Shown here: one piece after another, positions 1 through 16,315 of the stretch
Position numbering within the stretch: the stretch's first letter is position 1
How the letters are laid out: each line of letters begins with the position of its first letter
IMG/VR virus record: IMGVR_UViG_3300024265_000603
Coordinates: 1-16,315 of that record
Strand: one strand, 5' to 3'
DNA length: 16,315 nucleotides
The notes under the pieces: model-generated
Databases searched by the model: none
What the model was told of the DNA's origin: nothing
The model's input: the letters and a program-made list of their open reading frames with translations, nothing else
Made by a program: the position numbers and the translations under genes

Positions 1-315
1 CTTAAAACTGCACTTCCGAGCCCCTACTCATACCCTAACAAGACCAATCCTGAGATACTCTATGTATCGTAGTATAGGCAGAATACTTACTAAGTAAGAG
101 ATGGAGGGTTGTAAGAGGGTATGAGCAAAGAGGTACGATTATACAGAGAGTAGGTTGAGTTAAGAGTAGGGAGTGAGAGAGAATAGTTTGAGAGAGGTTG
201 TTTGGTTAAGGGTTGGTTGAGTGAGGTGGTTGTTAAAGAGGTGTAGAGAGATTGATTTAAAGAGGTGTTCTTAGAATGAGAGGTAGAAAGTGGTAAAGGG
301 GTTTTAAGAGTAGAC
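1..315 (+). repeat. Left terminal inverted repeat
   Basis: 1-291 is the exact reverse complement of 16025-16315; after a short mismatched patch, 301-315 matches 16001-16015. Confidence 0.98.
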
Positions 316-514
316 CAATGTTTAAGAAAATGAATTTGGATAGTTGATTTAGTGAGGTGTTATTAGAATAAACTTTAGGTAGAATAAGGGTGTAATATAT
401 TTGGTATAGAGAGTGTGAGAATTGAAATGTAATATTGATTGTAGACATAAAAGAAGGGATTTAAAAAATTAACTCAGGAAGGAAAATGAAAAAAGAAAAG
501 GGTTGATTAAAGAG

Positions 515-631
515 TTAAAAGAATATAAAATAAGGAATTTCTTTTGATGTTAAGACTATTATTAAACTAAATATAGCAAGGATAAGTAAAATTAAAACAA
601 TAATTAATCCTTCTAACTTTATATTATTCAT
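515..631 (-). CDS. 38-aa single-TM membrane peptide (MNNIKLEGLIIVLILLILAIFSLIIVLTSKEIPYFIFF)
   Basis: Hand-translated; ATGA overlap with the stop of the upstream ORF; hydrophobic; followed by a T-rich tract. Confidence 0.6.
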   Translation of the reverse strand: MNNIKLEGLIIVLILLILAIFSLIIVLTSKEIPYFIFF

Positions 632-813
632 AAGAAATATTCATATTCATTGTTATTATCTACACCATTACAGATACAAGTAAAATAAGTATAAACAAAA
701 TAATAAGGAAAAATAATACTTCTAAATATAAAATGTATATTTAAACTTAAAGGAAGTAAGAAGCTAACAAATAACCATAATATAAATATTATTTTTCTTG
801 TTATTATTTTCAT
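628..813 (-). CDS. Small membrane protein, 61 aa (MKIITRKIIF...)
   Basis: 3' part of track ORF 628..891; start moved to the ATG after the GTGAATAATATG junction motif. Confidence 0.55.
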   Translation of the reverse strand: MKIITRKIIFILWLFVSFLLPLSLNIHFIFRSIIFPYYFVYTYFTCICNGVDNNNEYEYFL

Positions 814-818
814 ATTAT

Positions 819-908
819 TCACATTCTTATAATGATATCTAATATTAATGTTGTAAATAAAGCTATAATTGATAATATTAATATAATACAATAATACTTT
901 TCTTTCAT
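819..908 (-). CDS. 29-aa membrane micropeptide (MKEKYYCIILILSIIALFTTLILDIIIRM), paralog of 2302..2394
   Basis: Hand-translated; junction motifs on both sides; clear similarity to 2302..2394. Confidence 0.65.
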   Translation of the reverse strand: MKEKYYCIILILSIIALFTTLILDIIIRM

Positions 909-909
909 A

Positions 910-1134
910 TCATTCACTTTTTAAGTAAGAAAAGAATTTATAGAAATCAATTATTTGATTTAAAGAATAAAGAAATTTTGTTTGATTTTGAATATATATA
1001 ATATATTTATCTCTTATTTTATTAATCTCTTTAATTTTTTGTTTGTTTGATAATTTATTATCATCTATTATTAAATAAGAATTAATAAGACAATCAAAAC
1101 CTTTTTTATAAAGTTTATATTTTTCTATACTCAT
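910..1134 (-). CDS. Hypothetical protein
   Basis: Track ORF 910..1143; ATG at 1134 preferred over GTG; ends KSE*. Confidence 0.7.
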   Translation of the reverse strand: MSIEKYKLYKKGFDCLINSYLIIDDNKLSNKQKIKEINKIRDKYIIYIQNQTKFLYSLNQIIDFYKFFSYLKSE

Positions 1135-1139
1135 ATCAT

Positions 1140-1352
1140 TCACTCTAAATAACTTATTTCTTTTACCTTATTATCTTTTAATATTTTTACTTGGTCATAA
1201 ATAAATATATCTGTAATACCTTTTAAGAAATGACTACTATTAATATATTTTCTAAATATCTTTATTGCTTTAAGAATATTTTTCGCTTTACATATTAATA
1301 CTATGCTATTATAAGATTCATTACAAATATTTTTTGTATAATAAGTTTTCAT
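1140..1352 (-). CDS. Hypothetical protein
   Basis: Track ORF 1140..1361; ATG after the junction motif. Confidence 0.7.
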   Translation of the reverse strand: MKTYYTKNICNESYNSIVLICKAKNILKAIKIFRKYINSSHFLKGITDIFIYDQVKILKDNKVKEISYLE

Positions 1353-1353
1353 A

Positions 1354-1533
1354 TTATTCACTTTTAATATGTGTAAAACTTGAAATATAAGGATAAGTAA
1401 AATATCCTTCTTTTAATGACATATTTAACCATTCTATTAAACATTTAATACATAGATTAGATGAGTTAAATATAAATCCTTTAATGTGAACATATTCATT
1501 TATTTCTTTTTTACATTCACTACATTTTGTCAT
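1354..1533 (-). CDS. Small C4 zinc-finger protein
   Basis: CSEC...CIKC; ends KSE*; track ORF 1354..1542. Confidence 0.7.
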   Translation of the reverse strand: MTKCSECKKEINEYVHIKGFIFNSSNLCIKCLIEWLNMSLKEGYFTYPYISSFTHIKSE

Positions 1534-1534
1534 A

Positions 1535-1750
1535 TCATTCACTTTTTAATTTGTTAATTCTCTTATATATTCTTTTATTAATTTGTATTAATAATAAGTC
1601 AATTAAGCCTAAAATAATTGTTGTTAAATGTATAGTTAATCCTTTAATTCCAGTTAAACTAATTATCCATAAAGGAATAATATAAATAAAAATTCCAAAA
1701 ATTAAATGATGTATTAAAAAGCTTAAAGTTTCTAATGTTTTAAGTTTCAT
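1535..1750 (-). CDS. Small two-TM membrane protein
   Basis: Two hydrophobic segments and a basic tail; ends KSE*; track ORF 1535..1759. Confidence 0.7.
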   Translation of the reverse strand: MKLKTLETLSFLIHHLIFGIFIYIIPLWIISLTGIKGLTIHLTTIILGLIDLLLIQINKRIYKRINKLKSE

Positions 1751-1755
1751 ATTAT

Positions 1756-1893
1756 TCACTTATATTCTATTTGATAACCACTAATTAAATCTTTTTTAAT
1801 TAATTCTTTACAAAATTTATCTATTTCACTATAGATTGATGTAAAAGGTTCACATTCTTTTAATTTAACAATAAAATCAACTTTATATGACAT
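1756..1893 (-). CDS. 45-aa hypothetical protein (MSYKVDFIVKLKECEP...)
   Basis: Hand-translated; exactly fills the gap between two junction motifs. Confidence 0.65.
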   Translation of the reverse strand: MSYKVDFIVKLKECEPFTSIYSEIDKFCKELIKKDLISGYQIEYK

Positions 1894-1894
1894 A

Positions 1895-2053
1895 TTATTC
1901 ACTTTTTATTAATTTCTCAAGTCTAAAAAGTACTTCTATAATAGATAAATAATAATTAGTTGATACTTTGATACTTCTAATCAAATTTTCATTTAATTTA
2001 TCTACTTTTGTTTCTATATCTTTTATTGTTTGTTCTATTCTATATATTTCCAT
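1895..2053 (-). CDS. 52-aa coiled-coil-like protein (MEIYRIEQTIKDIETKVDKLNENL...KSE)
   Basis: Hand-translated; junction motifs on both sides. Confidence 0.65.
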   Translation of the reverse strand: MEIYRIEQTIKDIETKVDKLNENLIRSIKVSTNYYLSIIEVLFRLEKLIKSE

Positions 2054-2061
2054 ATTATTCA

Positions 2062-2100
2062 CTTTTGGATAACTACGTTTTTGTAATTATCTTACAAAAG
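2062..2100 (-). promoter_or_regulatory. Bulged intergenic hairpin H1
   Basis: - strand CTTTTG-TAA-GATAATTAC-AAAAAC-GTAGTTATC-CAAAAG; one U.G wobble. Confidence 0.7.
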
Positions 2101-2110
2101 AAAAAATTAA

Positions 2111-2296
2111 TTATAATCTTATATCTACTCTTTCAATATCATTTAGATTAGTAATTAGATAAGTACCTAATTCAAAATAACTCATTTCTGATTCTTTATA
2201 ATTAATAGTATGATAATCTTTATCATATATTCTAACAAGAAACTTTTGTTCTTTACTAATCTCTAATGCTTGACCAATAATATCCTTTAATTCCAT
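2111..2296 (-). CDS. Hypothetical protein
   Basis: Track ORF 2111..2305; ATG after the junction motif. Confidence 0.7.
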   Translation of the reverse strand: MELKDIIGQALEISKEQKFLVRIYDKDYHTINYKESEMSYFELGTYLITNLNDIERVDIRL

Positions 2297-2301
2297 ATTA
2301 T

Positions 2302-2394
2302 TCACTTTCTTATGATTAAATCTATTATTATTGGTGTAAGAAAAGCAATAATTCCGTATATCAACACTAATATATAAAAGTATTTATCTTTCAT
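2302..2394 (-). CDS. 30-aa membrane micropeptide (MKDKYFYILVLIYGIIAFLTPIIIDLIIRK), paralog of 819..908
   Basis: Hand-translated; SD-like AAGGTG upstream; stop lies in the junction motif. Confidence 0.65.
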   Translation of the reverse strand: MKDKYFYILVLIYGIIAFLTPIIIDLIIRK

Positions 2395-2397
2395 ATC

Positions 2398-2670
2398 TTA
2401 CACCTTTTTATTTTCTGATTTCTTTTTATCATAGTTCAATTTAGCAATTCTTTCTATATCATAATATATTATTATAGCAGACATAATTATAATTCCACAC
2501 TTAATATAGAAAATTAAAGCTATTACAAAAATGCTTCTGAAATTCTTTACAAATAAACTTATAATAATAATATCTATAGCATTTATTATTATTATGCTAA
2601 ATAATGTTCTATGAAAAAGATTCCACCTTTCATTATTTAATTTAATTTTTTTAAATTGTAATTTTTTCAT
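2398..2670 (-). CDS. Two-TM membrane protein
   Basis: Track ORF 2398..2679; two hydrophobic stretches. Confidence 0.7.
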   Translation of the reverse strand: MKKLQFKKIKLNNERWNLFHRTLFSIIIINAIDIIIISLFVKNFRSIFVIALIFYIKCGIIIMSAIIIYYDIERIAKLNYDKKKSENKKV

Positions 2671-2678
2671 ATTATTCA

Positions 2679-2717
2679 CTTTTGGATAATTACGATTATG
2701 TAATTATCTTACAAAAG
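2679..2717 (-). promoter_or_regulatory. Bulged intergenic hairpin H2
   Basis: 6-bp lower stem, TAA bulge, perfect 9-bp GATAATTAC/GTAATTATC stem, 6-nt loop. Confidence 0.7.
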
Positions 2718-2723
2718 AAAATT

Positions 2724-3026
2724 TTAAATAATTATTGTATGATTAACTAAATTAATAGTATATATAGAATACCTTAATCTAATCAATAATGTAATTGCTT
2801 GAATTATTTCTTTATAGAATTCATCAAAATTAAGATGATTAGAAGGTATTTCTAAAGCTTCTTTACTCATTTCACCAATTTCCTCCATTATTATTACAAT
2901 CCACTTTTCAATAGTGTGAGTTTGATTAGGAAATTTTTTATCTTGAAATCTATATTCTTTCTCAATTTCTCTTAAAAATATTGATAATTTATTTTCTACA
3001 AAACTTTTCCAATTTTTATTTACCAT
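2724..3026 (-). CDS. MazG-like all-alpha nucleotide pyrophosphohydrolase
   Basis: E-x-x-x-Q-D-x-K-F, W-x-x-I-I-x-EEIGE-x-S-K-E and E-I-I-Q pattern typical of viral MazG-like proteins. Confidence 0.75.
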   Translation of the reverse strand: MVNKNWKSFVENKLSIFLREIEKEYRFQDKKFPNQTHTIEKWIVIIMEEIGEMSKEALEIPSNHLNFDEFYKEIIQAITLLIRLRYSIYTINLVNHTIII

Positions 3027-3037
3027 ATATTATTCAC

Positions 3038-3073
3038 TTTTGCTTAATCAGTAATTCTGATTAAGTATCAAAA
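3038..3073 (-). promoter_or_regulatory. Bulged intergenic hairpin H3
   Basis: TTTTG/CAAAA lower stem, 3-nt bulge, CTTAATCAG/CTGATTAAG stem, 5-nt loop. Confidence 0.7.
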
Positions 3074-3079
3074 ATAAAA

Positions 3080-3250
3080 TTATTTTCTATTGTATGGTTT
3101 AGTTCTTATTATTGTATCCACTACTAACTTAAATCTTTTACTAAATTCATAATGAATTATATCAAAATCAGAGTTATTTGGATTTGGTTTTAAATATAAG
3201 GTTAGTATTCTTTTATCTGTATTTACAATTACTTTATCAATTTCTTTCAT
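3080..3250 (-). CDS. 56-aa hypothetical protein (MKEIDKVIVNTDKRILTLYLKP...)
   Basis: Hand-translated; fills the gap between H3 and the upstream ORF. Confidence 0.6.
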   Translation of the reverse strand: MKEIDKVIVNTDKRILTLYLKPNPNNSDFDIIHYEFSKRFKLVVDTIIRTKPYNRK

Positions 3251-3252
3251 AT

Positions 3253-3519
3253 TTAATCAGTATCAGTCATTTTTATATTATTTAATTCATTATCTAAACT
3301 TTTAATTTTAATATTTGATATTGTTGTATCAATAGAAATTTGCTTTAATGTTAATTCATTAATAGCTTGTAATAATACAAGATTATTAAAACTGTGTAAT
3401 TCTCTTTTACTTAGACAATTTCTAAATTCTTGTATAAATAACTTTATAGTAGTAAAAGAAATATCTGGATAATTCATTAAAGTACTCTGAATCCAAATAA
3501 GAAATTTTTGTATTTTCAT
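3253..3519 (-). CDS. Hypothetical protein
   Basis: Track ORF; SD-like GAGGT and TAATG overlap with the upstream gene. Confidence 0.7.
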   Translation of the reverse strand: MKIQKFLIWIQSTLMNYPDISFTTIKLFIQEFRNCLSKRELHSFNNLVLLQAINELTLKQISIDTTISNIKIKSLDNELNNIKMTDTD

Positions 3520-3677
3520 TAATTTACCTCTGATTCTAATTTAAAGATTTTTACTATATAATTTCCTTTCGGTAAATTAAGTTCTTTTATATGGTTTGGA
3601 ATTCTAATTGTTAAATTTACCGGTGTATTATCTTTATATTTTTTCCAAATCCATTCAAATTTAAAGATTTCTTTCAT
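3519..3677 (-). CDS. 52-aa putative AbrB/SpoVT-like DNA-binding protein
   Basis: Hand-translated; LTIRIPNHIKELNLPKGNYIVKI resembles the AbrB swapped-hairpin pattern; junction motif upstream. Confidence 0.5.
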   Translation of the reverse strand: MKEIFKFEWIWKKYKDNTPVNLTIRIPNHIKELNLPKGNYIVKIFKLESEVN

Positions 3678-3686
3678 ATTATTCAC

Positions 3687-3722
3687 TTTTGCTTAATTAG
3701 TAATTCTAATTAAGTATCAAAA
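3687..3722 (-). promoter_or_regulatory. Bulged intergenic hairpin H4
   Basis: Same as H3 apart from a compensatory C-G to T-A change (CTTAATTAG/CTAATTAAG). Confidence 0.7.
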
Positions 3723-3728
3723 ATAAAA

Positions 3729-4160
3729 TTATTTAATTAATGAAACTATGTATACTTCAGCTTTACCTTTAAAGTTTGGTGTATCAATTTTAGCCATTGT
3801 TTTAGAAATTTGAATAATATGACCAATTAATTTTTCAAGTATTCCTTTAAAATGTTTTTGAATTAATACAGCCAATTGAAATTGAAAGCTTCTACCATTG
3901 GCATTAAATTGGTAAATGACATCATTCATTTCTAATAACATAGTATCATAAGTGTTTCCATCAGCAAATAAAGTCGGTGTAGGTAAAGAATGAACTTTTA
4001 CATTAAAAACATCAGAGACATTATCCCTTTCATTATAACTAACTTTTAATGTTGGTAATATATTAAGTTTTGAGACTTTATCCACTTTTTCCATTTCTAA
4101 ATTATCCATGAAGTTATAAACTTCTTTTTCTGTATCTTTTTCCTTTACCAAATTTTTCAC
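3729..4160 (-). CDS. Hypothetical protein, possible OB-fold ssDNA-binding protein
   Basis: 143-aa track ORF; beta-rich core ending in Y-x-V; lies near the replication genes; start uncertain (GTG 4160 or TTG 4151). Confidence 0.6.
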   Translation of the reverse strand: MKNLVKEKDTEKEVYNFMDNLEMEKVDKVSKLNILPTLKVSYNERDNVSDVFNVKVHSLPTPTLFADGNTYDTMLLEMNDVIYQFNANGRSFQFQLAVLIQKHFKGILEKLIGHIIQISKTMAKIDTPNFKGKAEVYIVSLIK

Positions 4161-4162
4161 TT

Positions 4163-4200
4163 CCTTTCACTAATTAGTTTATCTAATTAGTTTAAAAAAG
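4163..4200 (-). promoter_or_regulatory. Bulged intergenic hairpin H5
   Basis: - strand CTTTTT-TAA-ACTAATTAG-ATAAA-CTAATTAGT-GAAAGG; the lower stem pairs fully only with U.G wobbles on the - strand. Confidence 0.65.
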
Positions 4201-4218
4201 AAATTCTTAATTAGATTA

Positions 4219-4601: not shown

Positions 4602-4651
4602 AAAAAGTGAAAAATGTTCATTTTAAATTAAAAAAAGTGAAAATTGTTCAT
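4602..4651. repeat. Two 20-bp direct repeats with an internal TGAA-N5-TTCA dyad (operator-like)
   Basis: AAAAAGTGAAAAATGTTCAT (4602-4621) and AAAAAGTGAAAATTGTTCAT (4632-4651), 30-bp period. Confidence 0.6.
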
Positions 4652-5188: not shown

Positions 5189-7125
5189 AAAATAATTTTC
5201 ATGAATTTAGAAAGAATAAGAAGTTAAAGATTCAATCTAATTTCATTTTTGTTGATACTGAAAGTTTCTCTAATAAGAATATTCCTAATAAAGAAATCTT
5301 AACCTTTAAAGTAGGTTGCTTAATTACATGGAATAAAGAAAGTAATGAAATAAATAAAAATACTTTTTATGATGTAAAAGATTATTGGAAAACTGTAGAA
5401 AAGTGTTTTTCTAAGGATAAAAGAAATCTTATTATGTTTGCTCACAATACTCAATTTGATTTTCTTATGTTAGATGGCTTTAACCAATTATTACATAATG
5501 GATGGCAATTAAAAAGCCATTATGTAAAAAGCAAAACTTTTATTCTTGTATTTAAAAAATTATGTATAGATAATAAATATTATACCTTACATATTTGGGA
5601 TACTATGAATTATGTACCGGAATCATTAGATAAAATTGGCATATCTGTTGGTTATCCTAAATTATCTATAGATTTTGATAAAGTTTCAGATAAAGAACTT
5701 GAAATATATTGTATGAGAGATACAGAAATTATATATGAATTTATTAAAAAATTAATTAATTTCTTAGAAGTTAATGATTTAAGTAGACTAAAAGCTACTT
5801 CTGGAAGTTTATCTTTTAATACTTTTAGACATAAATTCTATAAACCAGAAACACATAAGATTTATATTCATGATTGGAAAAGAGCAATAAAGTTAGAACG
5901 TGAAAGTTATAAAGGTGGAATTACTGATTGTTTTAAAATAGGTACTCATAAAGATTTGTATAAACTTGATATTAATTCTATGTATCCATCAATAATGAGA
6001 AAATCTTTATTACCTATAAAATTATTATTTAGTTCGCATGAATCTAATTATTCTCAAAAAGATTTATTCAAAATATATAAATTAAGTGTGAAAAAAGGTT
6101 ATGGCTGTATAATAAAAGCAACAATTAATCTTAATTATAACAATCCTTATATTCTACATAATTTTGGTACTGGTAAAGCTTTATTTAGTTATGGTACATT
6201 TAAAGTAAGTATTTGTCAACCAGAAATAGATTTTATTATGAAATATGGAAAAATATTAACTATTCATGAGATTAATGTGTATAAAATGAAAGTTATTTTT
6301 AAGGATTTTGTTGATTTCTTTTATAAAATAAAAACTGATTCTCAAAAAAATAATGATAAAATTACCACCAGATTTGCTAAACTTATGCTTAATACTCAAT
6401 ATGGTAAATGGGGTCAAAGACAACTTGACTACATGAGTTTAGATATTACACATAAATTTATGATTGAATTTCAAGAAGTAATTAAACTTATGATAATTAA
6501 AATGAAAGAAAAATTACCTAATTTCAATTTAAGTAAAGATATAGTTTATTTAGGGTCAATTATTAATGAGGGTGAACTTTATATAGTAAATGGTAAATTA
6601 TATTTACTGAAACAAACAAACAGTAATGCTAAAGATTCTTTTGTTGCCATAGCTTCTTTTATTACATCATATTCAAGAATGTTATTAATAGACTATTTAA
6701 AAATAGCTAAAAGAAAAAATGTCTTTTATGTTGATACTGATTCTTTATTTGTAAATCAATCTGGATATAATAATCTTGAAAAAGATGATTGTATTAATGA
6801 ATTTGGATTAGGAAAGTTAAAACTTGAAGAAACTGGTGTAGGAAGCTTCTACGCACCTAAATTCTATGATTTTAATGATAATCGTAAAATTAAAGGTATT
6901 AATCAAAAATCATCTATTATTCTACTTGAAAATAATAAGAAAGTAGTTTATCAAGTTCATTTATGGAAAAAATTTAAATCAAACCTTAAAGATGGATATA
7001 AACCAGAACAAGAAATCCAAACAACAACAAAAGAAAGTAAAAAATATTATGATAAGGGTAAAATAGATGATTTTAATAATGTAATACCTTTCTCTGTTAG
7101 AGAAATTGAACTTATGATTAAATAA
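5185..7125 (+). CDS. polB: Protein-primed family B DNA polymerase (~646 aa if initiated at ATA 5185)
   Basis: ExoI FVDTE (5248-5262), ExoII AHNTQFD, ExoIII YCMRD, SYKGG, PolA LDINSMYP, PolB KLMLNTQYGKWG, PolC YVDTDS, KGI; frame open from 5155; the first ATG (5434) would delete ExoI; start position is inferred. Confidence 0.95.
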   Translation: MKNNFHEFRKNKKLKIQSNFIFVDTESFSNKNIPNKEILTFKVGCLITWNKESNEINKNTFYDVKDYWKTVEKCFSKDKRNLIMFAHNTQFDFLMLDGFNQLLHNGWQLKSHYVKSKTFILVFKKLCIDNKYYTLHIWDTMNYVPESLDKIGISVGYPKLSIDFDKVSDKELEIYCMRDTEIIYEFIKKLINFLEVNDLSRLKATSGSLSFNTFRHKFYKPETHKIYIHDWKRAIKLERESYKGGITDCFKIGTHKDLYKLDINSMYPSIMRKSLLPIKLLFSSHESNYSQKDLFKIYKLSVKKGYGCIIKATINLNYNNPYILHNFGTGKALFSYGTFKVSICQPEIDFIMKYGKILTIHEINVYKMKVIFKDFVDFFYKIKTDSQKNNDKITTRFAKLMLNTQYGKWGQRQLDYMSLDITHKFMIEFQEVIKLMIIKMKEKLPNFNLSKDIVYLGSIINEGELYIVNGKLYLLKQTNSNAKDSFVAIASFITSYSRMLLIDYLKIAKRKNVFYVDTDSLFVNQSGYNNLEKDDCINEFGLGKLKLEETGVGSFYAPKFYDFNDNRKIKGINQKSSIILLENNKKVVYQVHLWKKFKSNLKDGYKPEQEIQTTTKESKKYYDKGKIDDFNNVIPFSVREIELMIK

Positions 7126-7681: not shown

Positions 7682-10600
7682 TGAAAAAATTTAAAAGTTC
7701 TTTAGTTCTATTATTTGTTTTAATTGTTTTTACCTTATCAAGTATTCCTTTAAATGTAAAAGGAGTTTTACCAGATTCCATAGACTATACGTTTGCTAAT
7801 AATAATTTATATGATACAACTAAACCAATTTTCAATGAATCTACTAATGTGAATGTTAGAGATGTAAGTGAATATACTCAATTTTATAATGCCACTTTTG
7901 ATTTTAATAATGAAATAGTTGGTACAAATGGAACAAACATAGACTTTATAGATTTAGCCACTATTGGTGTAGATACTACAATTCAAATAATCTCATTATT
8001 GAACGGACATAGGAAAGTCTTAGAGTTAAATGATAATGATGTAGGGGCAGAAGTTATAGGACAAAATACATTTGATTCTACTCGATTATTTGGTACTATT
8101 GAGCTTTTTATTCGAAATACGGATACATCTCTAAGAACAGATATTTTAATTAGAAGTGGTATTACTAATGCTTTACAAGTTGCGATAGCAGGAAATACAG
8201 CAAATCAACTTCAATATTTTGATGGTATTTGGAATAATATTGTTTCAATTATAGATAATATTTGGTATCATATTAGAATAGATTTTGAGTGTGGTGCTGA
8301 TGGTTATGAAAGTCTCGCACCAGATACATTTCATATTTATGTTAATGGAATAAAGTATTCTGATTTATCTTTTAGGAATACTGTATCAACTGTTAATAAT
8401 TTAAGACTTCAAACAAATGTAGGGAATAGTGGTTATTTTACCTATTTTGATGCTATTGGTTATAGTTGGTTTAAACCAAATTATAATTTTACTAATGATG
8501 TTATTGGAAGTTTTCCAGAGTTTTGGATAAATAATGATGATTTTCCAAATATGACAACTGTTATAGCTTCTTTAGATGGTAATACTAAAGTAATGGAAAT
8601 GAATGATTTTACCAGAGACGGTACAACTTCCAGTAGTCTTTCTTTTAATAGGAATCAAGATGGCTTTATTCAATTTCTTATAGCAAAAGATAATTTATCT
8701 AATGATGCCCATGGAAGGTTTAGATTTCAAGAAGGTAATAATGAAAGAATGAGATTTAGTTTTATTGGTGCTGATTTATATTACCTTCACGCAAATACAA
8801 GTACCGAATTATTTGTTAGTAATGCTTTAAGTTTAATAAATACTTTTACTGATTTTAAATTTGTTTTAGATGATACTAATAATGAAGTGGATTTATATAT
8901 TGATGATATTCTTAAACAGTCTAATGTAAATTATTTTACTAACACAGTAGATACAATTAATAAAATAACTATTCAAACCGTAGAAGCTTCAGTACCAGAT
9001 TCAATTTATAGAATGTTTTTTGATGATTTTGATTTTAATCATTTAACCATAAATACCTCAATTAATAATATTATACCTCACATTGAAACTAATCCTTTTT
9101 TAAAAGAAGTGGATACATTTACTTTCGATTTAGTTTCTGCTAACACCCTTTATGATATAGGTACTGATAATCCTTCTGGTTGGTCTGATGTAGAAAATGG
9201 TTTTGACCATACTAATATAGCGCAAGATAATACAGATATACCTTCAGGAAGTAGAACTAATAACAGAGTAGTTCAAATTGAAGGTGTTGGTTCTGATAAT
9301 GCTATTAGTGGAATAGAAAAAGATTTTAATATTTCAAGTGGAATTTTTAATATTACAATGAAATATAATTATAGTTTAAATAATAATGATTTAGGAAGTT
9401 TTATTATTTCTATTTTTACTCAAAATTTACAATTACAAGTAAAAATTAATTGTACTTTTGTAAATGCTATATTTGGTAACCAACTTGATTATAGAAATTC
9501 AAGTTTTAAAAATGTAGAATTAATTCCATTTTTAGATTCTACTATTGCTATAAACCAAGAAGTTAGTTATAATATATACATAGATTCTTTTGTTGTATTT
9601 AGAGCAACAACAGAAGGAAGTTTAGGATTCCATTCTTATAATTTTACTTTTCCTTTAATAAATCCAGATTCTTTTGGTTTAGGTAAAATAATGATTATTT
9701 CTGACCCTACAAATGTAGGTGGTACATTTCAAACAATAGAGCTTAAAGAAGTAGGTGTTTATCATAACGGAATTTCTTTATCTGATGATTTTGGTTATTT
9801 ACCTTCAGTAATTTCTGATAATGCTTCTTTCTTTTGGCAATTTTTAGCACATAATTTAATAACAATAGAAGTTTTAGGTAATATGGCAATTCATGCCACT
9901 TCTTTTAATGAGTGGATATTAGGTGGTAATATGGAAGTTATAAGTAATATGGACACTTTTAATTTAACTCAGAGAATAATTAATGTTTATTTTCAAGATT
10001 TTGTTCATTTTGGCTTTTTAGGTATCCCTACACCTATGATTGTATTTTTTATTACTTCTCAATTTAATTTAACAAGTATAAGTATTAATGGAATAAAGTT
10101 TTCTGATGATACCCCTCACGATTTTGGTTTTCTTGCTTATGAATCTGGTGGTGTAGATAATAATGTAAGTTATTTCTTTTTAGATTCAAGTAATACATTA
10201 AAATATTTTCATACTACTGATGATAATAATGTAAATGAATTTATTCAGGCTGAGTTAGTTATTGGTGGTTTAGACACTAATAATACAGCAATACAGTTTA
10301 ATTCTAATAAAGATAATAATGCCTTTGGTTTTTTCAGAGTAAGTTATGTATCAACATCAACTATATTTAAAATACAATCAATTTTTAAAACTACTATATC
10401 TATATTACCTAATTCTAAATCTATTATTTCATATATAATTTTAATAACTGATAATAATGATAATACTGTTTCTGGTTTAACAACTGGTTTTGTTTCTAAT
10501 ATTAAATTATTATTTACTGAACAACAAATAGTTTCTGTAATTACATTTTCTTTATTATCTGTTTTAATTCCTTTAATTATTATATTAATACCAAGTTTAG

Positions 10601-12182: not shown

Positions 12183-12539
12183 ATGTCAATTGAAAATGAA
12201 CTTCCAGATTTACTTTCTAATCCTTTAAGTGAATTATCCAGAGATAAAAATATTACTTTACAACAAATATTAAATAATCTATTAGACGGAAGTAAAGACT
12301 TAGAGTTAAAGACACATATATTTAAACCTAAAGCTTTAAGTGGATTAAAGATAATTGCTGATGCTTTAATGAGTAAAGGGTATAAAACTTCCGCAAATCA
12401 TATTCTAAATTATATTGATACTTATCTTAAATACATGGTTAGTTATCAGAGAAAAAGTAGAACCGAAATAATTAAAGCTTTTACTATGTCAAGCAGAAAA
12501 GAAGTAATGGATAACGATTTTACAAAAAGTTTGGATTAA
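12183..12539 (+). CDS. Hypothetical helical protein preceding the ATPase
   Basis: Track ORF; coupled to both neighbours. Confidence 0.85.
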   Translation: MSIENELPDLLSNPLSELSRDKNITLQQILNNLLDGSKDLELKTHIFKPKALSGLKIIADALMSKGYKTSANHILNYIDTYLKYMVSYQRKSRTEIIKAFTMSSRKEVMDNDFTKSLD

Positions 12540-13231
12540 TGTTAGTAATTATACTTGGCAATTTAGGGAGCGGTAAAACTTATATTATGATGTTATTAGC
12601 TTATCAAGATAAAAGACAAATATTATCTAATTTTAATATAAAAAGAAAGAATGTAAAGGTAATTGATGTACCAGATTTACTTGATTTACCAGATGATATA
12701 GTTTTATTAATGGATGAAGCTTATAGTTGGATTGAATCCAGAAGTAGTCTTGATTCATTGAATAAATATTTATCAAGTGTTTTATTCCATATTAGAAAAA
12801 CCAATACTGATATTTATATTACTACACCAATGTATTCTACAATAGATAAAAGGTTTCGAAATCAGGCTAATTATATAATTTTTTGTAAACATAGAAATAA
12901 TTTTGAATCTGATGATTTTCATTTTTTATTCTATGATGTAAATAATAGAACTTATGGAATTAGTACACTAAAGTATTCTGAAGCTAAAAAATACTTTCAT
13001 TTATATGATACTAATGAAAAAGTAGAATCATACAAGAAAAGAGGTTTACAATTCAATATCTTAAAAAAATATCCAGAAAGAATGAAAGAATATATAAAAC
13101 AAATATCAAAATTAGCAAATAAACAATTAAATGGTAATATTACTCACGACAGAGTAAAGAAATTTCTATTTGATAATGGAATTGATTTAGGTTTTCATTC
13201 ATTTCTATATATAGATTTAAAAGGTAATTAA
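12539..13231 (+). CDS. P-loop morphogenesis/extrusion ATPase (Zot/inovirus pI-like, as in spindle-shaped viruses)
   Basis: Walker A GNLGSGKT at the N-terminus, Walker B LLMDEA, HIRK and IDKRFR motifs. Confidence 0.88.
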   Translation: MLVIILGNLGSGKTYIMMLLAYQDKRQILSNFNIKRKNVKVIDVPDLLDLPDDIVLLMDEAYSWIESRSSLDSLNKYLSSVLFHIRKTNTDIYITTPMYSTIDKRFRNQANYIIFCKHRNNFESDDFHFLFYDVNNRTYGISTLKYSEAKKYFHLYDTNEKVESYKKRGLQFNILKKYPERMKEYIKQISKLANKQLNGNITHDRVKKFLFDNGIDLGFHSFLYIDLKGN

Positions 13232-13232
13232 A

Positions 13233-13406
13233 ATGATAACAACAATAAAGATAACAAAATATATTAAATTACAACAATGTTCTAATCATGGTTTAAAGGT
13301 TTTCTTAAAATATAAGGGTAAATGGATAATGATTAAATTAACAAATTATCAAGTAGAATTATTACAATATATATTAAATATTATAAATGGTAAACATGAA
13401 AAATAA
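13233..13406 (+). CDS. 57-aa basic hypothetical protein (MITTIKITKYIKLQQCSNHG...)
   Basis: Hand-translated; SD-like AAGGT; fills the gap after the ATPase. Confidence 0.55.
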   Translation: MITTIKITKYIKLQQCSNHGLKVFLKYKGKWIMIKLTNYQVELLQYILNIINGKHEK

Positions 13407-14202
13407 ACTAAAAAGAATTTTTGCTTCGGTTAGATATTCATTAATGTTTAAAACAATGAAATATATAACACCAATAATGTATGAAAAGTTTATTATCTTA
13501 AATAATATCTGGAAAAGTAAAAATCATATTGGTGGCAAATTAGATAATGTAAATAGAATTCCAAGACCAGCAATATTATTTATAAAAAAATATTTTAAAG
13601 ATAAACTAATTACTGGATTAGAATTAGGTGTTAAATTAGGTAAAAATTCTGAAAGTATTCTAAAAGAGTTAAATATTCAAACTCTTTATCTGATTGATGC
13701 TTGGGATGATTATGTTGCGAATGAAATAACTAAAGAAGGGCAAAAAAGACATTACTTACTTACATTGAAAAAATTTAAAGATGATAATAGAGTAAAAATA
13801 ATAAAGGGTTTTTCCGAAAATATTGTTCATAGATTTGATAATGAGAGTTTGGATTTTGTATATATTGACGGAAATCATAGTTATGATTTTGTTTATCAAG
13901 ATATAACTATATGGAGTAAAAAAGTAAAACAAAATGGAATTATATCTGGTCACGATATTTTTAATTTTAATGATGTATTATCAGCTGTTAAGAAGTGGAG
14001 TATAAAAAATCAATATAATTTCTTTATAAAACCACCAGATTGGTATATTATAAAGAAAGATATTATTACTTGTAAAGAATGTAGTTATTGTAATAAAGAA
14101 TTAGATATATGTACTTATGAAAGTATTGAGAAATTATCAAATAAAAATCTTGAAATTTGTATTTGTTTTATGCCAATAATGAATTATAATATAAGAAAAT
14201 GA
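13387..14202 (+). CDS. Class I SAM-dependent methyltransferase (Methyltransf_24-like) with a Cys-rich C-terminal tail
   Basis: GLELGVKLG, LYLIDAW, LDFVYIDGNHSY and GIISGHD motifs; CKECSYC...C...CIC tail; start 13387 or 13396. Confidence 0.88.
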   Translation: MVNMKNKLKRIFASVRYSLMFKTMKYITPIMYEKFIILNNIWKSKNHIGGKLDNVNRIPRPAILFIKKYFKDKLITGLELGVKLGKNSESILKELNIQTLYLIDAWDDYVANEITKEGQKRHYLLTLKKFKDDNRVKIIKGFSENIVHRFDNESLDFVYIDGNHSYDFVYQDITIWSKKVKQNGIISGHDIFNFNDVLSAVKKWSIKNQYNFFIKPPDWYIIKKDIITCKECSYCNKELDICTYESIEKLSNKNLEICICFMPIMNYNIRK

Positions 14203-14327
14203 AAACTAATAAATTAAAAATGTGTTGGATTAAAGGGAATCCATGTTTTAACCAAACCAATGATGTAAGAAAATGTATTGAATGTAGTATATGGAGTAAA
14301 GAATATAGAAATAATAATAATAATTAA
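14199..14327 (+). CDS. 42-aa four-cysteine metal-binding peptide (CWIKGNPC...CIEC)
   Basis: Hand-translated; ATGA overlap with the methyltransferase stop. Confidence 0.6.
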   Translation: MKTNKLKMCWIKGNPCFNQTNDVRKCIECSIWSKEYRNNNNN

Positions 14328-14329
14328 CT

Positions 14330-14599
14330 ATGAAAAATAAATATAAATTCTTAATTTGTATTATAGCATTAGGAATATTAGCTTCAGTTTCTTTAATTGT
14401 ACCAAGTGAATCTAAAATGGTAATACCTTCTAAAGTAATTAATTCTACTTGTATTGGAATGTGTGGAAGTAAACCTTTACAAGATATAGAGTTTTTTATA
14501 TTTTTAACAGTATTATTACCTTTATTTGCTATAGTACTTTTTATTTTTCTATTTATGTTTGATAAGGATAAAAAGAAAAATAAGATTAATCGTGAATAA
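14330..14599 (+). CDS. Two-TM membrane protein
   Basis: Two hydrophobic helices; loop with NST and CxxxC; basic tail. Confidence 0.7.
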   Translation: MKNKYKFLICIIALGILASVSLIVPSESKMVIPSKVINSTCIGMCGSKPLQDIEFFIFLTVLLPLFAIVLFIFLFMFDKDKKKNKINRE

Positions 14600-14639
14600 T
14601 TGTTTACCATTAACAGTTTAATGATTAAATGTTTCATAA

Positions 14640-14931: not shown

Positions 14932-15111
14932 TTAATAGTATTTAAAAGAATTAATCAAACAAATGTTCATTCTTGAAAAATCAAATTTATCTATTAATCT
15001 TTTTGAAGGTTCTTTACCTACATTACCTTTTACAACATATTGATAATTTATTAATTCATTACCTAAATAATCTTTCATGTATAAAGTTATTAATTTTATT
15101 TTATCAAACAT
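14932..15111 (-). CDS. Hypothetical protein
   Basis: Track ORF 14932..15120; ATG after AAAAGTGAAAACT; followed by a T-rich tract. Confidence 0.6.
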   Translation of the reverse strand: MFDKIKLITLYMKDYLGNELINYQYVVKGNVGKEPSKRLIDKFDFSRMNICLINSFKYY

Positions 15112-15116
15112 AGTTT

Positions 15117-15317
15117 TCACTTTTGGTTTATTTTTATTATTATAGATTTAGGAATCCAAATATTTTGTTTAACAGAATGGTGTACAGCTATTACAGGGTG
15201 TAGTTTAAAATGAATAGCTTTATTAGTTTCTTTTATAATATTTCCATCTAAACAATTAGGATTTCTCATAAGATTATTCTTTTTTAGAAACCATTCTGGT
15301 AAATAAATACTTATCAT
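15117..15317 (-). CDS. Small beta-rich viral protein (IIKETxKA...WIPKS family)
   Basis: Motif recalled from small phage and archaeal-virus hypothetical proteins; SD-like GAGTTGA. Confidence 0.75.
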   Translation of the reverse strand: MISIYLPEWFLKKNNLMRNPNCLDGNIIKETNKAIHFKLHPVIAVHHSVKQNIWIPKSIIIKINQK

Positions 15318-15332
15318 TTTTAATCAACTCTA

Positions 15333-15367
15333 TTTGGTTATTTAGGATTATCTAAATAACTTTCAAA
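15333..15367 (-). promoter_or_regulatory. Bulged intergenic hairpin H6
   Basis: TTTG/CAAA lower stem, 3-nt bulge, GTTATTTAG/CTAAATAAC stem, 6-nt loop. Confidence 0.7.
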
Positions 15368-15375
15368 AAGAAAAA

Positions 15376-15645
15376 TTAAAATATGTAATAACCTTCTTTA
15401 AATGCTTTATCAATAGATTCTTTATTATCTTTATACACATTTTCACATTCTAAAGAACAAAAATCAGATTTAGGTAATATTTTAAAAGTACTTCCACAGG
15501 CTTTACATTCTCTATGTTCTTTACACAGTCTAATAGAAATAATACCTCTACTCTCAAGATAATTAGTAAGATTATTACATCCATAAACAGAACATAAATC
15601 ATTTTTTAGAACTTTTTTAGGTGGTATAATATTATTATATGTCAT
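15376..15645 (-). CDS. Double zinc-finger protein
   Basis: CSVYGC...CKEH followed by CKAC...FCSLEC; track ORF 15376..15654. Confidence 0.75.
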   Translation of the reverse strand: MTYNNIIPPKKVLKNDLCSVYGCNNLTNYLESRGIISIRLCKEHRECKACGSTFKILPKSDFCSLECENVYKDNKESIDKAFKEGYYIF

Positions 15646-15654
15646 AGTTTTCAC

Positions 15655-15691
15655 TTTTGGTTATTTAGGTTTGTCTAAATAACTTTCAAAA
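15655..15691 (-). promoter_or_regulatory. Bulged intergenic hairpin H7
   Basis: Same upper stem as H6 with a different loop. Confidence 0.7.
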
Positions 15692-15696
15692 AGAAA

Positions 15697-15855
15697 TTAT
15701 TGATTTAATTTTTCTAATTCTCTTTTAATAATTCTCATATAAGAATCAATTTTGTTTATATCATTAGAATCCATTATTTTTTGTTTATTTGCTTCATAAT
15801 GTTCAAACCAATTCATTATTATGTTCATTTGATTTTTTTGTTTTTTATTTAGCAT
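15697..15855 (-). CDS. 52-aa hypothetical protein (MLNKKQKNQMNIIMNWFEHY...), probably leaderless
   Basis: Hand-translated; ATG ~26 nt downstream of the TATA box. Confidence 0.65.
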   Translation of the reverse strand: MLNKKQKNQMNIIMNWFEHYEANKQKIMDSNDINKIDSYMRIIKRELEKLNQ

Positions 15856-15896: not shown

Positions 15897-16000
15897 TTAC
15901 ACCACATTTTCCCTAAAAATTATACCCTCCTTCTATTTAACTCTCATTCTATTAACCCCTCTTAAAACCAACCCTCATTTTACTCATATACTAAAAAATC

Positions 16001-16315
16001 GTCTACTCTTAAAACCCTTTCTCTACTTTCTACCTCTCATTCTAAGAACACCTCTTTAAATCAATCTCTCTACACCTCTTTAACAACCACCTCACTCAAC
16101 CAACCCTTAACCAAACAACCTCTCTCAAACTATTCTCTCTCACTCCCTACTCTTAACTCAACCTACTCTCTGTATAATCGTACCTCTTTGCTCATACCCT
16201 CTTACAACCCTCCATCTCTTACTTAGTAAGTATTCTGCCTATACTACGATACATAGAGTATCTCAGGATTGGTCTTGTTAGGGTATGAGTAGGGGCTCGG
16301 AAGTGCAGTTTTAAG
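16001..16315 (-). repeat. Right terminal inverted repeat
   Basis: Reverse complement of 1-315, compared base by base. Confidence 0.98.

What the first reader, a model, noticed from the sequence alone, without database searches (positions are those of the whole stretch)
515..3690. Cassette-like microgene array joined by a fixed stop-RBS-start motif
Seen: - strand AGTGAAT(A/G)ATATG or a close variant precedes the ATGs at 813, 908, 1134, 1352, 1533, 1750, 1893, 2053, 2296, 2670, 3026 and 3677. AAAAGTGAAAACTATG precedes 15111 and 15645. The motif often supplies the upstream stop. Four unrelated proteins therefore end in KSE* (910, 1354, 1535, 1895), and others stop at its TGA (819, 1140, 1756, 2302, 15117). 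The apparent shared MNNM/MNDM N-termini in the ORF track come from reading the motif's GTG as a start. Conservation covers the spacer as well as the SD-like core. Inference: a standard translational-coupling module that may also provide microhomology for shuffling accessory (host-takeover or anti-defence) genes.
Basis: partly seen in the sequence, partly recalled or inferred. Interest (0 to 1): 0.7.

Follow-up and report, generated by a model that had tools for sequence, protein, structure and literature searches.

The report
Shuffled microgene cassettes, Asgard virus
In a published 16-kb virus of Asgard (Loki-type) archaea, a run of tiny unknown genes is joined by one fixed 13-16-base stop/ribosome-site/start junction, often preceded by a conserved hairpin, and comparison with relatives shows the genes are gained, lost and reordered exactly at these junctions.

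Summary
AGTGAATRATATG occurs 10 times exactly on the - strand (0.03 expected), with close variants at 6 more starts. It supplies the upstream stop at every internal junction of the array.

The window is contig Ga0209976_10001089, published as wyrdvirus WyrdV3. This is a complete linear Asgard-archaeal virus with 324-nt terminal repeats and a protein-primed polymerase.

The motif core is an AT-shifted form of the archaeal GGTGA Shine-Dalgarno box. Relatives grade from AGTGAA to GGTGAA to GAGGTGA at the same position. An SD overlapping a TGA stop is already known from fusellovirus SSV4 and Thermococcus.

What goes beyond an ordinary RBS:
- Only 4 bp pair with the assumed 16S tail, yet 16 positions are fixed.
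- Lokiarchaeal chromosomal contigs mostly lack SDs, and none carries this motif.
- Seven copies sit inside a ~60-nt hairpin module supported by covariation.
- In the closest relative (L102), the shared cassettes MazG, g2296 and g1352 lie in reversed order, and DNA homology starts at the motif.
- Four other relatives carry 0, 1, 1 or 2 unrelated microgenes in one slot.

Translational coupling, the recombination mechanism and the microgene functions remain inferred. I rate it a new variant of a known kind, moderately interesting.

The parts
1..324 (.). Left terminal inverted repeat of the linear genome. Its partner is 15992-16315.
   Evidence: The arms are 324 nt and 98% complementary (I1). The contig is named as complete, with TIRs, in the wyrdvirus paper.
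15992..16315 (.). Right terminal inverted repeat.
   Evidence: I1.
515..2063 (-). Longest uninterrupted microgene unit: g2053, g1893, g1750, g1533, g1352, g1134, g908, g813 and g631 (29-74 aa). All but the last junction use the motif. g813 and g631 overlap by ATGA.
   Evidence: No Pfam hit above cut-off. Only g1352 has homologs in relatives.
811..823 (-). Junction motif TGTGAATAATATG. g908 stops on its TGA and g813 starts on its ATG.
906..918 (-). Junction motif AGTGAATGATATG. g1134 ends KSE* on the TGA at -4..-2.
1132..1144 (-). Junction motif. g1352 stops on the TGA of GTGA.
1350..1362 (-). Junction motif. g1533 ends KSE*. The homology block with L102 for g1352 starts here.
1531..1543 (-). 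Junction motif. g1750 ends KSE*.
1748..1760 (-). Junction motif. g1893 stops on the TGA of GTGA.
1891..1903 (-). Junction motif. g2053 ends KSE*.
2044..2105 (-). Hairpin module: pyrimidine run CTTTTG, 3-nt bulge, 9-bp stem, loop, purine run CAAAAG. It ends in the motif and the ATG of g2053 (13-mer at 2051-2063).
   Evidence: Fold -12.8 kcal/mol, z -3.6. CM hit of 63.6 bits. Covariation.
2294..2306 (-). Junction motif. g2394 stops on the TGA of GTGA and g2296 starts. The homology block with L102 for g2296 starts here.
2392..2404 (-). Variant junction GGTGTAAGATATG. The upstream ORF g2670 is in the same frame as the ATG, and the variant creates an in-frame TAA. The SD is stronger (-6.5 kcal/mol).
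2667..2722 (-). Hairpin module ending in the motif and the ATG of g2670 (13-mer at 2668-2680).
   Evidence: 64.7 bits.
2724..3026 (-). g3026, a 100-aa protein called a MazG homolog in the wyrdvirus paper. This cassette is shared with L102 at a different array position.
   Evidence: Paper. tblastn 45%, E 7e-23. The block 3037-2667 corresponds to L102 6763-7118.
3019..3079 (-). Hairpin module ending in the motif variant AGTGAATAATATATG before g3026.
   Evidence: z -6.1; 68 bits. It shows a compensatory C-G to T-A change relative to the copy at 3668-3728 (D5).
3668..3728 (-). Hairpin module ending in the motif and the ATG of g3677 (13-mer at 3675-3687).
   Evidence: 66 bits.
4142..4205 (-). Hairpin module before g4160, with probable start TTG at 4149-4151 preceded by AAGTGAAAAAT. 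Relatives L064, L078 and L102 have a module at the orthologous position.
   Evidence: (69.8 bits).
15109..15121 (-). Right-arm junction AGTGAAAACTATG. g15317 stops on its TGA and g15111 starts.
15315..15374 (-). Right-arm hairpin module before g15317. Its 3' part is the degenerate motif CCAAATAGAGTTGATTAAAAATG.
   Evidence: 56.3 bits.
15636..15697 (-). Right-arm hairpin module ending in AAAAGTGAAAACTATG before g15645, a Zn-finger-like protein.
   Evidence: (69.1 bits).
804..922 (-). Duplicated cassette unit (motif + 29-aa membrane microgene g908 + motif). Its paralog is 2287-2408 (g2394).
   Evidence: Protein identity 55%, E 5e-8. DNA alignment A3 shows similarity fading just outside the flanking motifs.

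Best explanation
Identity. The window is the complete linear genome of wyrdvirus WyrdV3, a spindle-type virus assigned to Asgard (Loki/Thor) archaea. Both arms carry - strand arrays of mostly orphan microgenes.

The junction A-AAA-GTG-AAT-RAT-ATG works as a portable translation adaptor with four parts:
1. GUGA is the 3' half of the archaeal SD (GGAGGUGA) and pairs with UCAC of the 16S tail. The A/U-rich flanks keep the site unstructured.
2. The two frames that are not the downstream frame both hit a stop. One is the TGA inside GTGA. The other is TAA or TGA at -4..-2, which explains why the only variable base is a purine.
3. An upstream ORF in the third frame is stopped by a small edit: GTG-TAA at 2394, and TAA-GTG in L102.
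4. A ribosome therefore terminates 1 or 5 nt before the next ATG and can reinitiate. This is termination-reinitiation coupling, so promoterless microgenes are expressed in series.

At the head of each unit the same junction forms the 3' end of a ~60-nt hairpin module. Its pyrimidine run pairs with the CAAAAG(TG) of the junction.

Because these 16-60-nt sequences recur at every cassette border, recombination or template switching between copies can insert, delete, duplicate and reorder cassettes while always regenerating a working junction.

Shown: the motif statistics, the frame logic, the SD gradient in relatives, hairpin covariation, and cassette reordering and indels with breakpoints at the motif.
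Inferred: ribosome pairing, coupling, what the hairpin does, the recombination mechanism, and the roles of the microgenes.
For: Motif: 10 exact copies against 0.03 expected. Sixteen positions are conserved.

Frame logic:
- 4 ORFs end KSE* and 5 end on the GTGA TGA.
- The frame-1 exception at 2394 creates GTG TAA.
- L102 has AGT TAA GTG AAT AAT ATG at its frame-1 junction.

SD identity:
- Relatives have GGTGAA, GGTGAT or GAGGTGA at the same distance from the ATG.
- In the window itself the + strand structural genes use GAGG or GGTGG.
- The GGTGA-with-TGA overlap is known in SSV4 and T. kodakarensis (PMC2784483).

Coupling geometry: experiments show reinitiation needs overlaps or very short gaps, and about 20 nt abolishes it (PMC10666635).

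Hairpin:
- z scores of -3.3 to -6.1.
- 7 of 8 inner pairs show compensatory changes.
- 96.9% of cells are paired against 40-50% when the partners are slid, and 0 of 500 shuffles reach this.
- The model finds 6 new copies in the independent relative L102.

Shuffling:
- One slot holds 0, 1, 1 or 2 genes in L070, L089, L078 and L064.
- L089's cassette is flanked by direct repeats of the junction.
- The window order is MazG > g2296 > g1352, while the L102 order is g1352 > g2296 > MazG.
- Homology begins at the motif.
- The g2296 family lies in the left arm of WyrdV3 and WyrdV6 but in the right arm of WyrdV2.
- The g908/g2394 duplication is bounded by motifs.
Against: - The predicted SD pairing is only 4 bp, at -3.9 kcal/mol. 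Background is -1.95 +/- 1.95. The 16S tail used was a generic archaeal one taken from general knowledge, not the host's.
- SDs are reported as rare in Lokiarchaea (PMC7531240, PMC12993045). They are also rare in the Loki contigs examined here, so SD use by the host ribosome is not certain.
- No transcript or translation data exist.
- Breakpoints at gene borders are also what selection alone would leave.
- The relatives are divergent (50-90% protein identity), so individual recombination events cannot be reconstructed.
- T5 runs are common everywhere in this genome, so a terminator role for the module's T-run is not supported by enrichment.
Confidence: 0.6

Rival explanations
1. The motif is just the family's ordinary SD-type RBS. 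Its uniformity comes from extreme AT-richness and shared descent. The cassette mosaicism arises from illegitimate recombination at random sites, filtered by selection for intact genes, so the motif plays no part in recombination.
For: - The core grades into the canonical GGTGA or GAGGTGA in relatives.
- At about 77% A+T the spacer has few alternatives.
- Mosaic borders at gene ends are common in viruses (general knowledge).
Against: - The same 13-mer, including a spacer that is not needed as a stop at 8 of the sites, is fixed in two genomes whose shared cassette proteins are only 42-59% identical.
- Fifteen other relatives show no 12-mer repeated more than twice at gene starts.
- DNA identity begins within a few bases of the motif in three independent blocks.
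- One cassette is flanked by direct repeats of the junction.
Confidence: 0.25
2. The motif is mainly a transcription element. The TG of GTGA is the initiator, lying 26-27 nt downstream of a TATA-like box (the left hairpin arm, or AT-rich coding sequence). Each microgene would then be transcribed on its own as a nearly leaderless mRNA, in the same way most host genes appear to be.
For: - The centres of the left hairpin arms lie 33-39 nt before the ATG, which puts a predicted start at -6 to -13. The arms (TAATTA, TATATA, TTATTTA) resemble the TATA-like boxes seen at about -25 to -33 in Loki contigs (distances counted by hand).
- Host genes mostly lack SDs.
Against: - In relatives the motif becomes a better complement of the 16S tail (GGTGA, GAGGTGA), not a better initiator.
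- No conserved box lies 26 nt upstream of the internal copies. Information content at -20..-14 is 0.06-0.4 bits.
- TATA-like strings are unavoidable at about 77% A+T.
- The stop-codon logic has no role in this model.
Confidence: 0.1
3. The 16-mer is the operator of a sequence-specific RNA-binding protein or nuclease that switches the whole accessory gene set on or off together, in the manner of T4 RegA (repressor at early-gene initiation regions) or RegB (cleaves early SDs).
For: - Conservation far exceeds the 4 bp that can pair with rRNA.
- The motif is confined to the - strand arm genes, whereas the structural genes use GAGG or GGTGG.
- Several Zn-finger microproteins are encoded in the arms (paper).
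Against: - No candidate regulator was identified. There are no Pfam hits.
- Relatives tolerate variable spacers after AAAAGTGAA.
- The RegA and RegB analogy rests on general knowledge and was not tested.
Confidence: 0.05

Closest known systems
GGTGA Shine-Dalgarno boxes overlapping a TGA stop in compact archaeal genomes (fusellovirus SSV4; Thermococcus kodakarensis), as summarised in PMC2784483
   Same: [quoted passage not shown]
- The setting is an archaeal spindle-type virus with tightly packed small genes.
- GUGA pairs with the UCAC of the 16S tail.
   Different: - Here the first G is A (AGTGA), so only 4 bp can pair.
- The conserved unit is 16 nt including the spacer.
- A second stop in another frame is built into the spacer.
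- The same string also marks recombination breakpoints.
Termination-reinitiation translational coupling of closely spaced gene pairs (Huber et al. 2019, PMC6728339; 2023, PMC10666635)
   Same: The genes are co-directional, the stop-to-start distances are within the range that supports reinitiation, and an SD lies in the 3' end of the upstream gene.
   Different: - The commonest natural geometry is a -4 or -1 overlap. Here the gaps are +1 and +5 nt.
- Nothing was measured in this system or in any Asgard archaeon.
PeSL (promoter-early stem-loop) mobile regulatory cassettes of T4-type phages (PMC2839356, PMC4122927)
   Same: - Short conserved regulatory modules with a stem-loop flank small orphan genes in hyperplastic regions.
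- Insertions, deletions and replacements between relatives are bounded by the modules.
   Different: - PeSLs are sigma-70 promoters plus terminators in bacterial myoviruses, and they have experimental proof (mini-circles).
- Here the host is archaeal, and promoter and terminator functions are not established.
- The element ends in a translation junction.
- The genome is a 16-kb protein-primed linear DNA.
Integron gene cassettes
   Same: The ORFs are promoterless and unrelated, arranged in series, each bounded by a recurring site. Cassette content and order vary.
   Different: - No integrase or other recombinase was detected in the window.
- The recurring site is a translation junction, not an attC recombination site.
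- Hairpins occur only at unit heads.

Membership tests
Shine-Dalgarno-type ribosome binding site | Complementarity to the 3' tail of the small-subunit rRNA | tested here: inconclusive
   There are 4 bp (GUGA:UCAC) at -3.9 kcal/mol against a generic archaeal tail, with background at -1.95 +/- 1.95. Relatives extend the same box to GGTGA and GAGGTGA.
Shine-Dalgarno-type ribosome binding site | Position about 5-10 nt upstream of the start codon | tested here: met
   GTGA ends 5 nt before the ATG at all canonical sites, and 4-9 nt before it in relatives.
Shine-Dalgarno-type ribosome binding site | The host translation system uses SD-led initiation | tested here: inconclusive
   On Lokiarchaeal contigs L098 and L099, most of about 33 starts lack an SD, and about 7-8 have GAGG or GGTGA-type boxes. 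Reviews describe SDs as not prevalent in Lokiarchaea.
Termination-reinitiation coupling junction | Co-directional genes with an overlap or a very short stop-to-start distance | tested here: met
   The gaps are 1 nt (TAA/TGA-T-ATG) or 5 nt (TGA-ATRAT-ATG) at 9 internal junctions. Coupling is lost at about 20 nt in model organisms.
Termination-reinitiation coupling junction | Downstream translation depends on upstream translation | not testable with these tools
   This needs reporter assays.
PeSL-like mobile regulatory cassette | A conserved module with a stem-loop that recurs between small variable genes | tested here: met
   There are 7 modules in the window, 9 in five relatives and 6 in L102. 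Covariation is shown.
PeSL-like mobile regulatory cassette | Insertions, deletions or replacements between relatives are bounded by the module | tested here: met
PeSL-like mobile regulatory cassette | Promoter and terminator activity of the module | tested here: inconclusive
   The stem arms are TATA-like and a T-run precedes them. However, T5 runs are not enriched at the modules, and the bacterial consensus scans are uninformative. No transcript data exist.
PeSL-like mobile regulatory cassette | Physical recombination products between modules (mini-circles, variants) | not testable with these tools
   This needs the reads of the source metagenomes or a culture.
Integron | An integrase adjacent to the array | tested here: not met
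   No recombinase family was found in any window ORF scanned.
Wyrdviruses (Asgard archaeal spindle-type viruses) | The contig is one of the described genomes and carries the shared morphogenetic module, pI-like ATPase, pPolB and TIRs | tested here: met
   - The contig name Ga0209976_10001089 equals WyrdV3 in 10.1101/2021.07.29.453957.
- pPolB matches PF03175 and the ATPase has a Zot/pI-like domain.
- TIRs are shown.
- The MCP, adhesin and the 5-gene block are conserved in WyrdV2 and WyrdV6.
Any Rfam RNA family | A match to a curated covariance model | tested here: not met
   The only match is a sub-threshold snoRNA hit elsewhere in the window.

The most novel reading that the evidence does not exclude
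The hairpin module together with the 16-nt junction is a dedicated gene-cassette capture and expression system of Asgard-archaeal viruses, an archaeal counterpart of PeSLs or integron cassettes that works without a recombinase. Copy-choice by the protein-primed polymerase, or short-homology recombination between junction copies, would move promoterless microgenes within and between genomes. The hairpin, by pairing with the SD-proximal CAAAAG(TG), would gate translation or mark unit boundaries. If so, these would be the first defined cis-acting expression and recombination elements for Asgard viruses, and ready-made parts for Asgard genetic tools.
Probability: 0.25. Interest if true: 0.7.

Novelty: new variant of a known kind. 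Interest (0 to 1): 0.5.

Why it matters
[quoted passage not shown] Reviews say SD sequences are rare in them.

This virus family carries strongly conserved SD-type junctions. In this lineage the junction takes one fixed form that stops any incoming reading frame and restarts the next gene. That gives a concrete, testable prediction that Asgard ribosomes use SD-assisted reinitiation on polycistronic mRNAs.

The junction and the covariation-supported hairpin are also candidate portable expression parts for the first Asgard virus-host cultures.

On the evolutionary side, the reversed cassette order and the motif-bounded indels show how a 16-kb virus turns over orphan genes, which are the usual suspects for anti-defence functions.

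Tried and rejected
- Megablast of the whole window against the phage collection gave no match.
- Genetic code 4 or 25 (TGA read as sense) was considered and rejected. The long ORFs are intact under table 11 and TGG is used for Trp.
- GTG of the motif as the true start (MNNM N-termini) was rejected.
- The exact 16-mer was searched across IMG/VR. 58 contigs match, but only this one has more than one copy, so no further relatives came from that search.
- The bacterial promoter and terminator scan was uninformative: 58 found against 50 expected, and 0 terminators.
- Rfam gave nothing.
- Pfam on 20 arm ORFs gave nothing above cut-off. PHROGs and Pfam on the large ORFs returned only the polymerase, ATPase and methyltransferase.
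- A T-run terminator role is not supported, because T5 runs occur throughout the genome.
- L091, a 321-kb contig carrying a methyltransferase homolog at 42.6% GC, could not be tied to Asgard archaea and was not used as host.
- The covariance model found no hairpin modules in distant wyrdviruses or in the Loki chromosomal contigs.
- A Kozak-like reading of the -3 purine was considered. It cannot be separated from the stop-codon explanation, so it was not pursued.
- No structure prediction was attempted. The microproteins have no alignments deep enough to give reliable models.

Full report
**What the window is**

The 16,315-bp window carries 324-nt terminal inverted repeats that are 98% complementary. 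It encodes:
- a protein-primed family-B polymerase at 5434-7125 (PF03175);
- a Zot/pI-like P-loop ATPase at 12539-13231;
- a methyltransferase at 13387-14202.

G+C is about 17-28% along the window.

Collection scans identify it as IMGVR_UViG_3300024265_000603, which is the same as Ga0209976_10001089. Medvedeva et al. (bioRxiv 10.1101/2021.07.29.453957) name this contig WyrdV3. They describe it as a (nearly) complete linear genome of the wyrdviruses, spindle-type viruses assigned to Asgard archaea. L067 is WyrdV2 and L066 is WyrdV6. A relative, L090, sits in a Promethearchaeota MAG. That paper's text contains none of the words promoter, Shine-Dalgarno or ribosome binding, so the motif appears not to have been described.

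AGTGAATRATATG occurs 10 times exactly, always on the - strand and always ending in a start codon. Shuffles give 0.03 expected. Near-variants occur at 813, 3026, 4149, 15111 and 15645.

For 11 canonical sites, conservation runs from -13 to +3. The single variable base is -3, which is A or G.

The stop claims are correct. Four proteins end KSE*, and five ORFs end on the TGA of GTGA.

ATG is the start, not GTG. At 3026 a 2-nt longer spacer puts GTG out of frame. In relatives the spacer length varies.

**Frame logic (read directly from the sequence)**

Written as A-AAA-GTG-AAT-RAT-ATG, the frame of the downstream gene is open. A second frame meets TGA inside GTGA. The third frame meets TAA or TGA at -4..-2, and this is the codon that contains the only variable base, so either purine keeps the stop.

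Where an upstream ORF happens to be in the downstream frame, the motif is minimally edited:
- GG-TG-TAA-GAT-ATG at 2394;
- AGT-TAA-GTG-AAT-AAT-ATG in the relative L102.

The stop-to-start distances are therefore 1 or 5 nt. Experiments in Haloferax and E. coli show that reinitiation needs overlaps or very short gaps and is almost abolished at about 20 nt (PMC10666635; PMC6728339).

**What the core is**

More distant wyrdviruses have GGTGAA, GGTGAT, GAGGTGA or GGAGG at the same distance from their start codons. These are complements of the archaeal 16S tail, whose sequence I take from general knowledge as GAUCACCUCCU.

Within the window the + strand structural genes use GAGG or GGTGG, at -7 to -16 kcal/mol. 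The junction offers only GUGA:UCAC, at -3.9 kcal/mol, against a background of -1.95 +/- 1.95.

The core is therefore an AT-shifted, weak form of the family's SD. An SD GGTGA whose TGA is the upstream stop has been reported for fusellovirus SSV4 and Thermococcus kodakarensis (PMC2784483). That part is not new.

**Is it simply the host RBS?**

Reviews state that SDs are not prevalent in Lokiarchaea (PMC7531240, PMC12993045).

I reached chromosomal Lokiarchaeal contigs through a viral ThyX. L098, L099 and L100 carry a ThyX that is 84% identical to a protein named Candidatus Lokiarchaeota archaeon, in the same synteny and among ordinary cellular genes.

Of about 33 gene starts on these contigs, most have no SD. 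They show TATA-like boxes at roughly -25 to -33. A minority has GAGGT or GGTGA, and none has the 16-nt motif.

The sample is small, and the true host of WyrdV3 is unknown. On this evidence, though, the full motif is a viral signal and not the host consensus.

Seven junction copies are the 3' end of a ~60-nt module: those at 2053, 2670, 3026, 3677, 4149, 15317 and 15645. The module consists of:
- a pyrimidine run (CTTTTG or TTTATTTTTG);
- a 3-nt bulge;
- an 8-9-bp AT-rich stem and a 5-6-nt loop;
- the purine run CAAAAG(TGAA), which pairs back to the pyrimidine run.

In the folded strand, part of the SD region is therefore sequestered. Fold z-scores are -3.3 to -6.1.

Relatives L064, L066, L070, L075, L078 and L089 have the same architecture with different stem sequences, partly at orthologous positions (before the g4506 and g4160 homologs).

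Evidence from 16 copies:
- RNAalifold finds compensatory changes at 7 of 8 inner pairs.
- For my 12-pair structure, 96.9% of cells pair, against 40-50% when the partners are slid.
- There are 39 double-change cells against 13 in shuffles, and 0 of 500 shuffles reach this.
- A covariance model built from these copies finds six further copies, at 52-69 bits, in L102, which was not in the training set.
- The model finds none in distant wyrdviruses or in the Loki chromosomal contigs.
- No Rfam family matches.

What the hairpin does is open. Possibilities are a unit boundary, a promoter with palindromic TATA-like arms, a 5' stabiliser, translational gating, or a recombination substrate.

**Are the microgenes cassettes?**

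Within the window only one pair is paralogous: g908 and g2394, at 55% identity. The duplicated unit is motif-ORF-motif.

Against 30 relatives first fetched, only the following have homologs:
- g3519, g4160, g4506 and the ORF upstream of the polymerase;
- the structural block and the methyltransferase;
- g2296.

All other arm ORFs are orphans. g1134 has no homolog among 5.8 billion proteins.

Comparative evidence for cassette turnover:

(a) One slot lies downstream of a conserved promoter-like block plus junction. In it, L070 has no cassette, L089 has one, L078 has a different one, and L064 has two others, all before the same Zn-finger gene. Homology breaks at the junction ATG and resumes at the next SD. 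L089's cassette is flanked by direct repeats of the junction.

(b) A second slot, between the Zn-finger gene and the g4506 homolog, holds different genes in L070 and L064. The L070 gene ends in KSE*.

(c) The g2296 family lies in the left arm on the - strand in WyrdV3, in an inverted left arm in WyrdV6, and in the right arm in WyrdV2. Each copy sits directly behind an (A/G)GTGAA box.

(d) L102 was found through a weak homolog of g1352. It is the closest relative that has an arm: its MCP is 89% identical and its g4160 homolog 59%. It shares:
- the exact 13-mer, with 5 exact and 2 near copies against 1.2 expected;
- the KSE* endings;
- the hairpin modules.

Its shared cassettes, however, run g3519 > g1352 > g2296 > MazG, whereas the window has g3519 > MazG > g2296 > g1352. 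The non-shared genes between them also differ.

In all three shared blocks, DNA similarity begins within a few bases of the junction, while the sequence upstream is unrelated.

(e) In L101 the g1352 family sits between two methyltransferase genes.

Gene order is therefore not invariant, and the breakpoints coincide with the junction or hairpin.

**How unusual is the uniformity?**

In 15 relatives no 12-mer recurs at more than two gene starts. The window has GTGAATAATATG at eight, and L102 shares this property.

The TAA or TGA at -4..-2 is kept even at the eight sites where it is not used as a stop. Local need therefore cannot explain it. Propagation or homogenisation of one junction sequence is the simpler account.

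**Interpretation**

I commit to the following. The junction is a weak SD-type reinitiation adaptor that stops any incoming frame and restarts the next gene. Together with the hairpin module, it is the recurring short homology at which cassettes are exchanged. My confidence is about 0.6.

Three rivals are scored in the report:
- an ordinary SD, with selection alone explaining the breakpoints;
- an initiator of per-gene promoters;
- an operator for an RNA-binding regulator.

The closest known systems are:
- the SSV4 and Thermococcus GGTGA-with-TGA overlap;
- termination-reinitiation coupling;
- the PeSL mobile regulatory cassettes of T4-type phages (PMC2839356).

It is not an integron, because no recombinase was found.

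**Verdict**

This is a new variant of known kinds in a published genome. It is of moderate interest, mainly because of the Asgard context and because it yields testable predictions about Asgard translation and viral gene turnover.

Noticed in passing
window 2044-2105, 2667-2722, 3019-3079, 3668-3728, 4142-4205, 15315-15374, 15636-15697 (- strand): A ~60-nt hairpin module supported by covariation sits at the head of each transcription-unit-like block. It consists of a pyrimidine run, a bulge, an AT-rich stem-loop and a purine run, and its outer stem pairs with the 5' part of the junction motif. Its function is unknown and no Rfam family matches.
   Followed up: yes
L102 1907-3961 (-) compared with window 5434-7125 (+): The closest relative by capsid protein (89% aa) has, at the same genome position, a polymerase-sized ORF only 24% identical to the window's pPolB and without a Pfam hit. 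The neighbouring upstream ORF is 47% identical. The replication gene seems to have been exchanged between otherwise close viruses.
   Followed up: partly
L066 (WyrdV6) 1650-2830 compared with window 2100-4200: The early module (g4160, g3519 and g2296 homologs) lies on the polymerase strand in WyrdV6 but on the opposite strand in WyrdV3. A whole arm module is therefore inverted between relatives.
   Followed up: partly
window 4602-4650 (+ strand): A direct repeat, AAAAAGTGAAAA(A)T(G/T)GTTCAT, occurs twice, 30 nt apart, at the start of the 193-aa ORF upstream of the polymerase. It lies in the divergent region between the two gene sets. The true start codon of that ORF is unclear (GTG at 4607 or 4637).
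   Followed up: no
window 14248-14637 (-) and 14330-14599 (+): Two ORFs overlap on opposite strands at the point where GC skew changes sign. The + strand 89-aa membrane-like ORF looks real. The 129-aa - strand ORF is probably an antisense artefact.
   Followed up: no
L076 2690-2782 (- strand): Three tandem 31-nt copies of CTTATAAAATATAAGTGAAACATGAATTTTA lie at a contig end. Each copy is a small palindrome followed by GTGAA and ATG, so the hairpin-plus-junction unit is itself tandemly repeated.
   Followed up: no
window 15930-15971 and 16023-16064, mirrored near 252-290: Diverged ~42-nt direct repeats, spaced 93 nt apart, lie at the inner ends of the terminal inverted repeats, in the G-richer terminal regions.
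   Followed up: no
L098, L099, L100 (Lokiarchaeal chromosomal contigs): Most gene starts have no SD but do have TATA-like boxes about 25-33 nt upstream, which suggests leaderless or very short-leader mRNAs. A minority, mainly closely spaced genes, has GAGGT or GGTGA.
   Followed up: partly
(protein hits on 12-18-kb contigs): Dozens of further 12-18-kb contigs encode close homologs of the wyrdvirus ThyX or methyltransferase. The family looks much larger than the nine genomes described in 2021.
   Followed up: no
window 10179-10231 and 10269-10321 (+ strand): A 53-nt direct repeat at 74% identity lies inside the 1027-aa adhesin gene.
   Followed up: no
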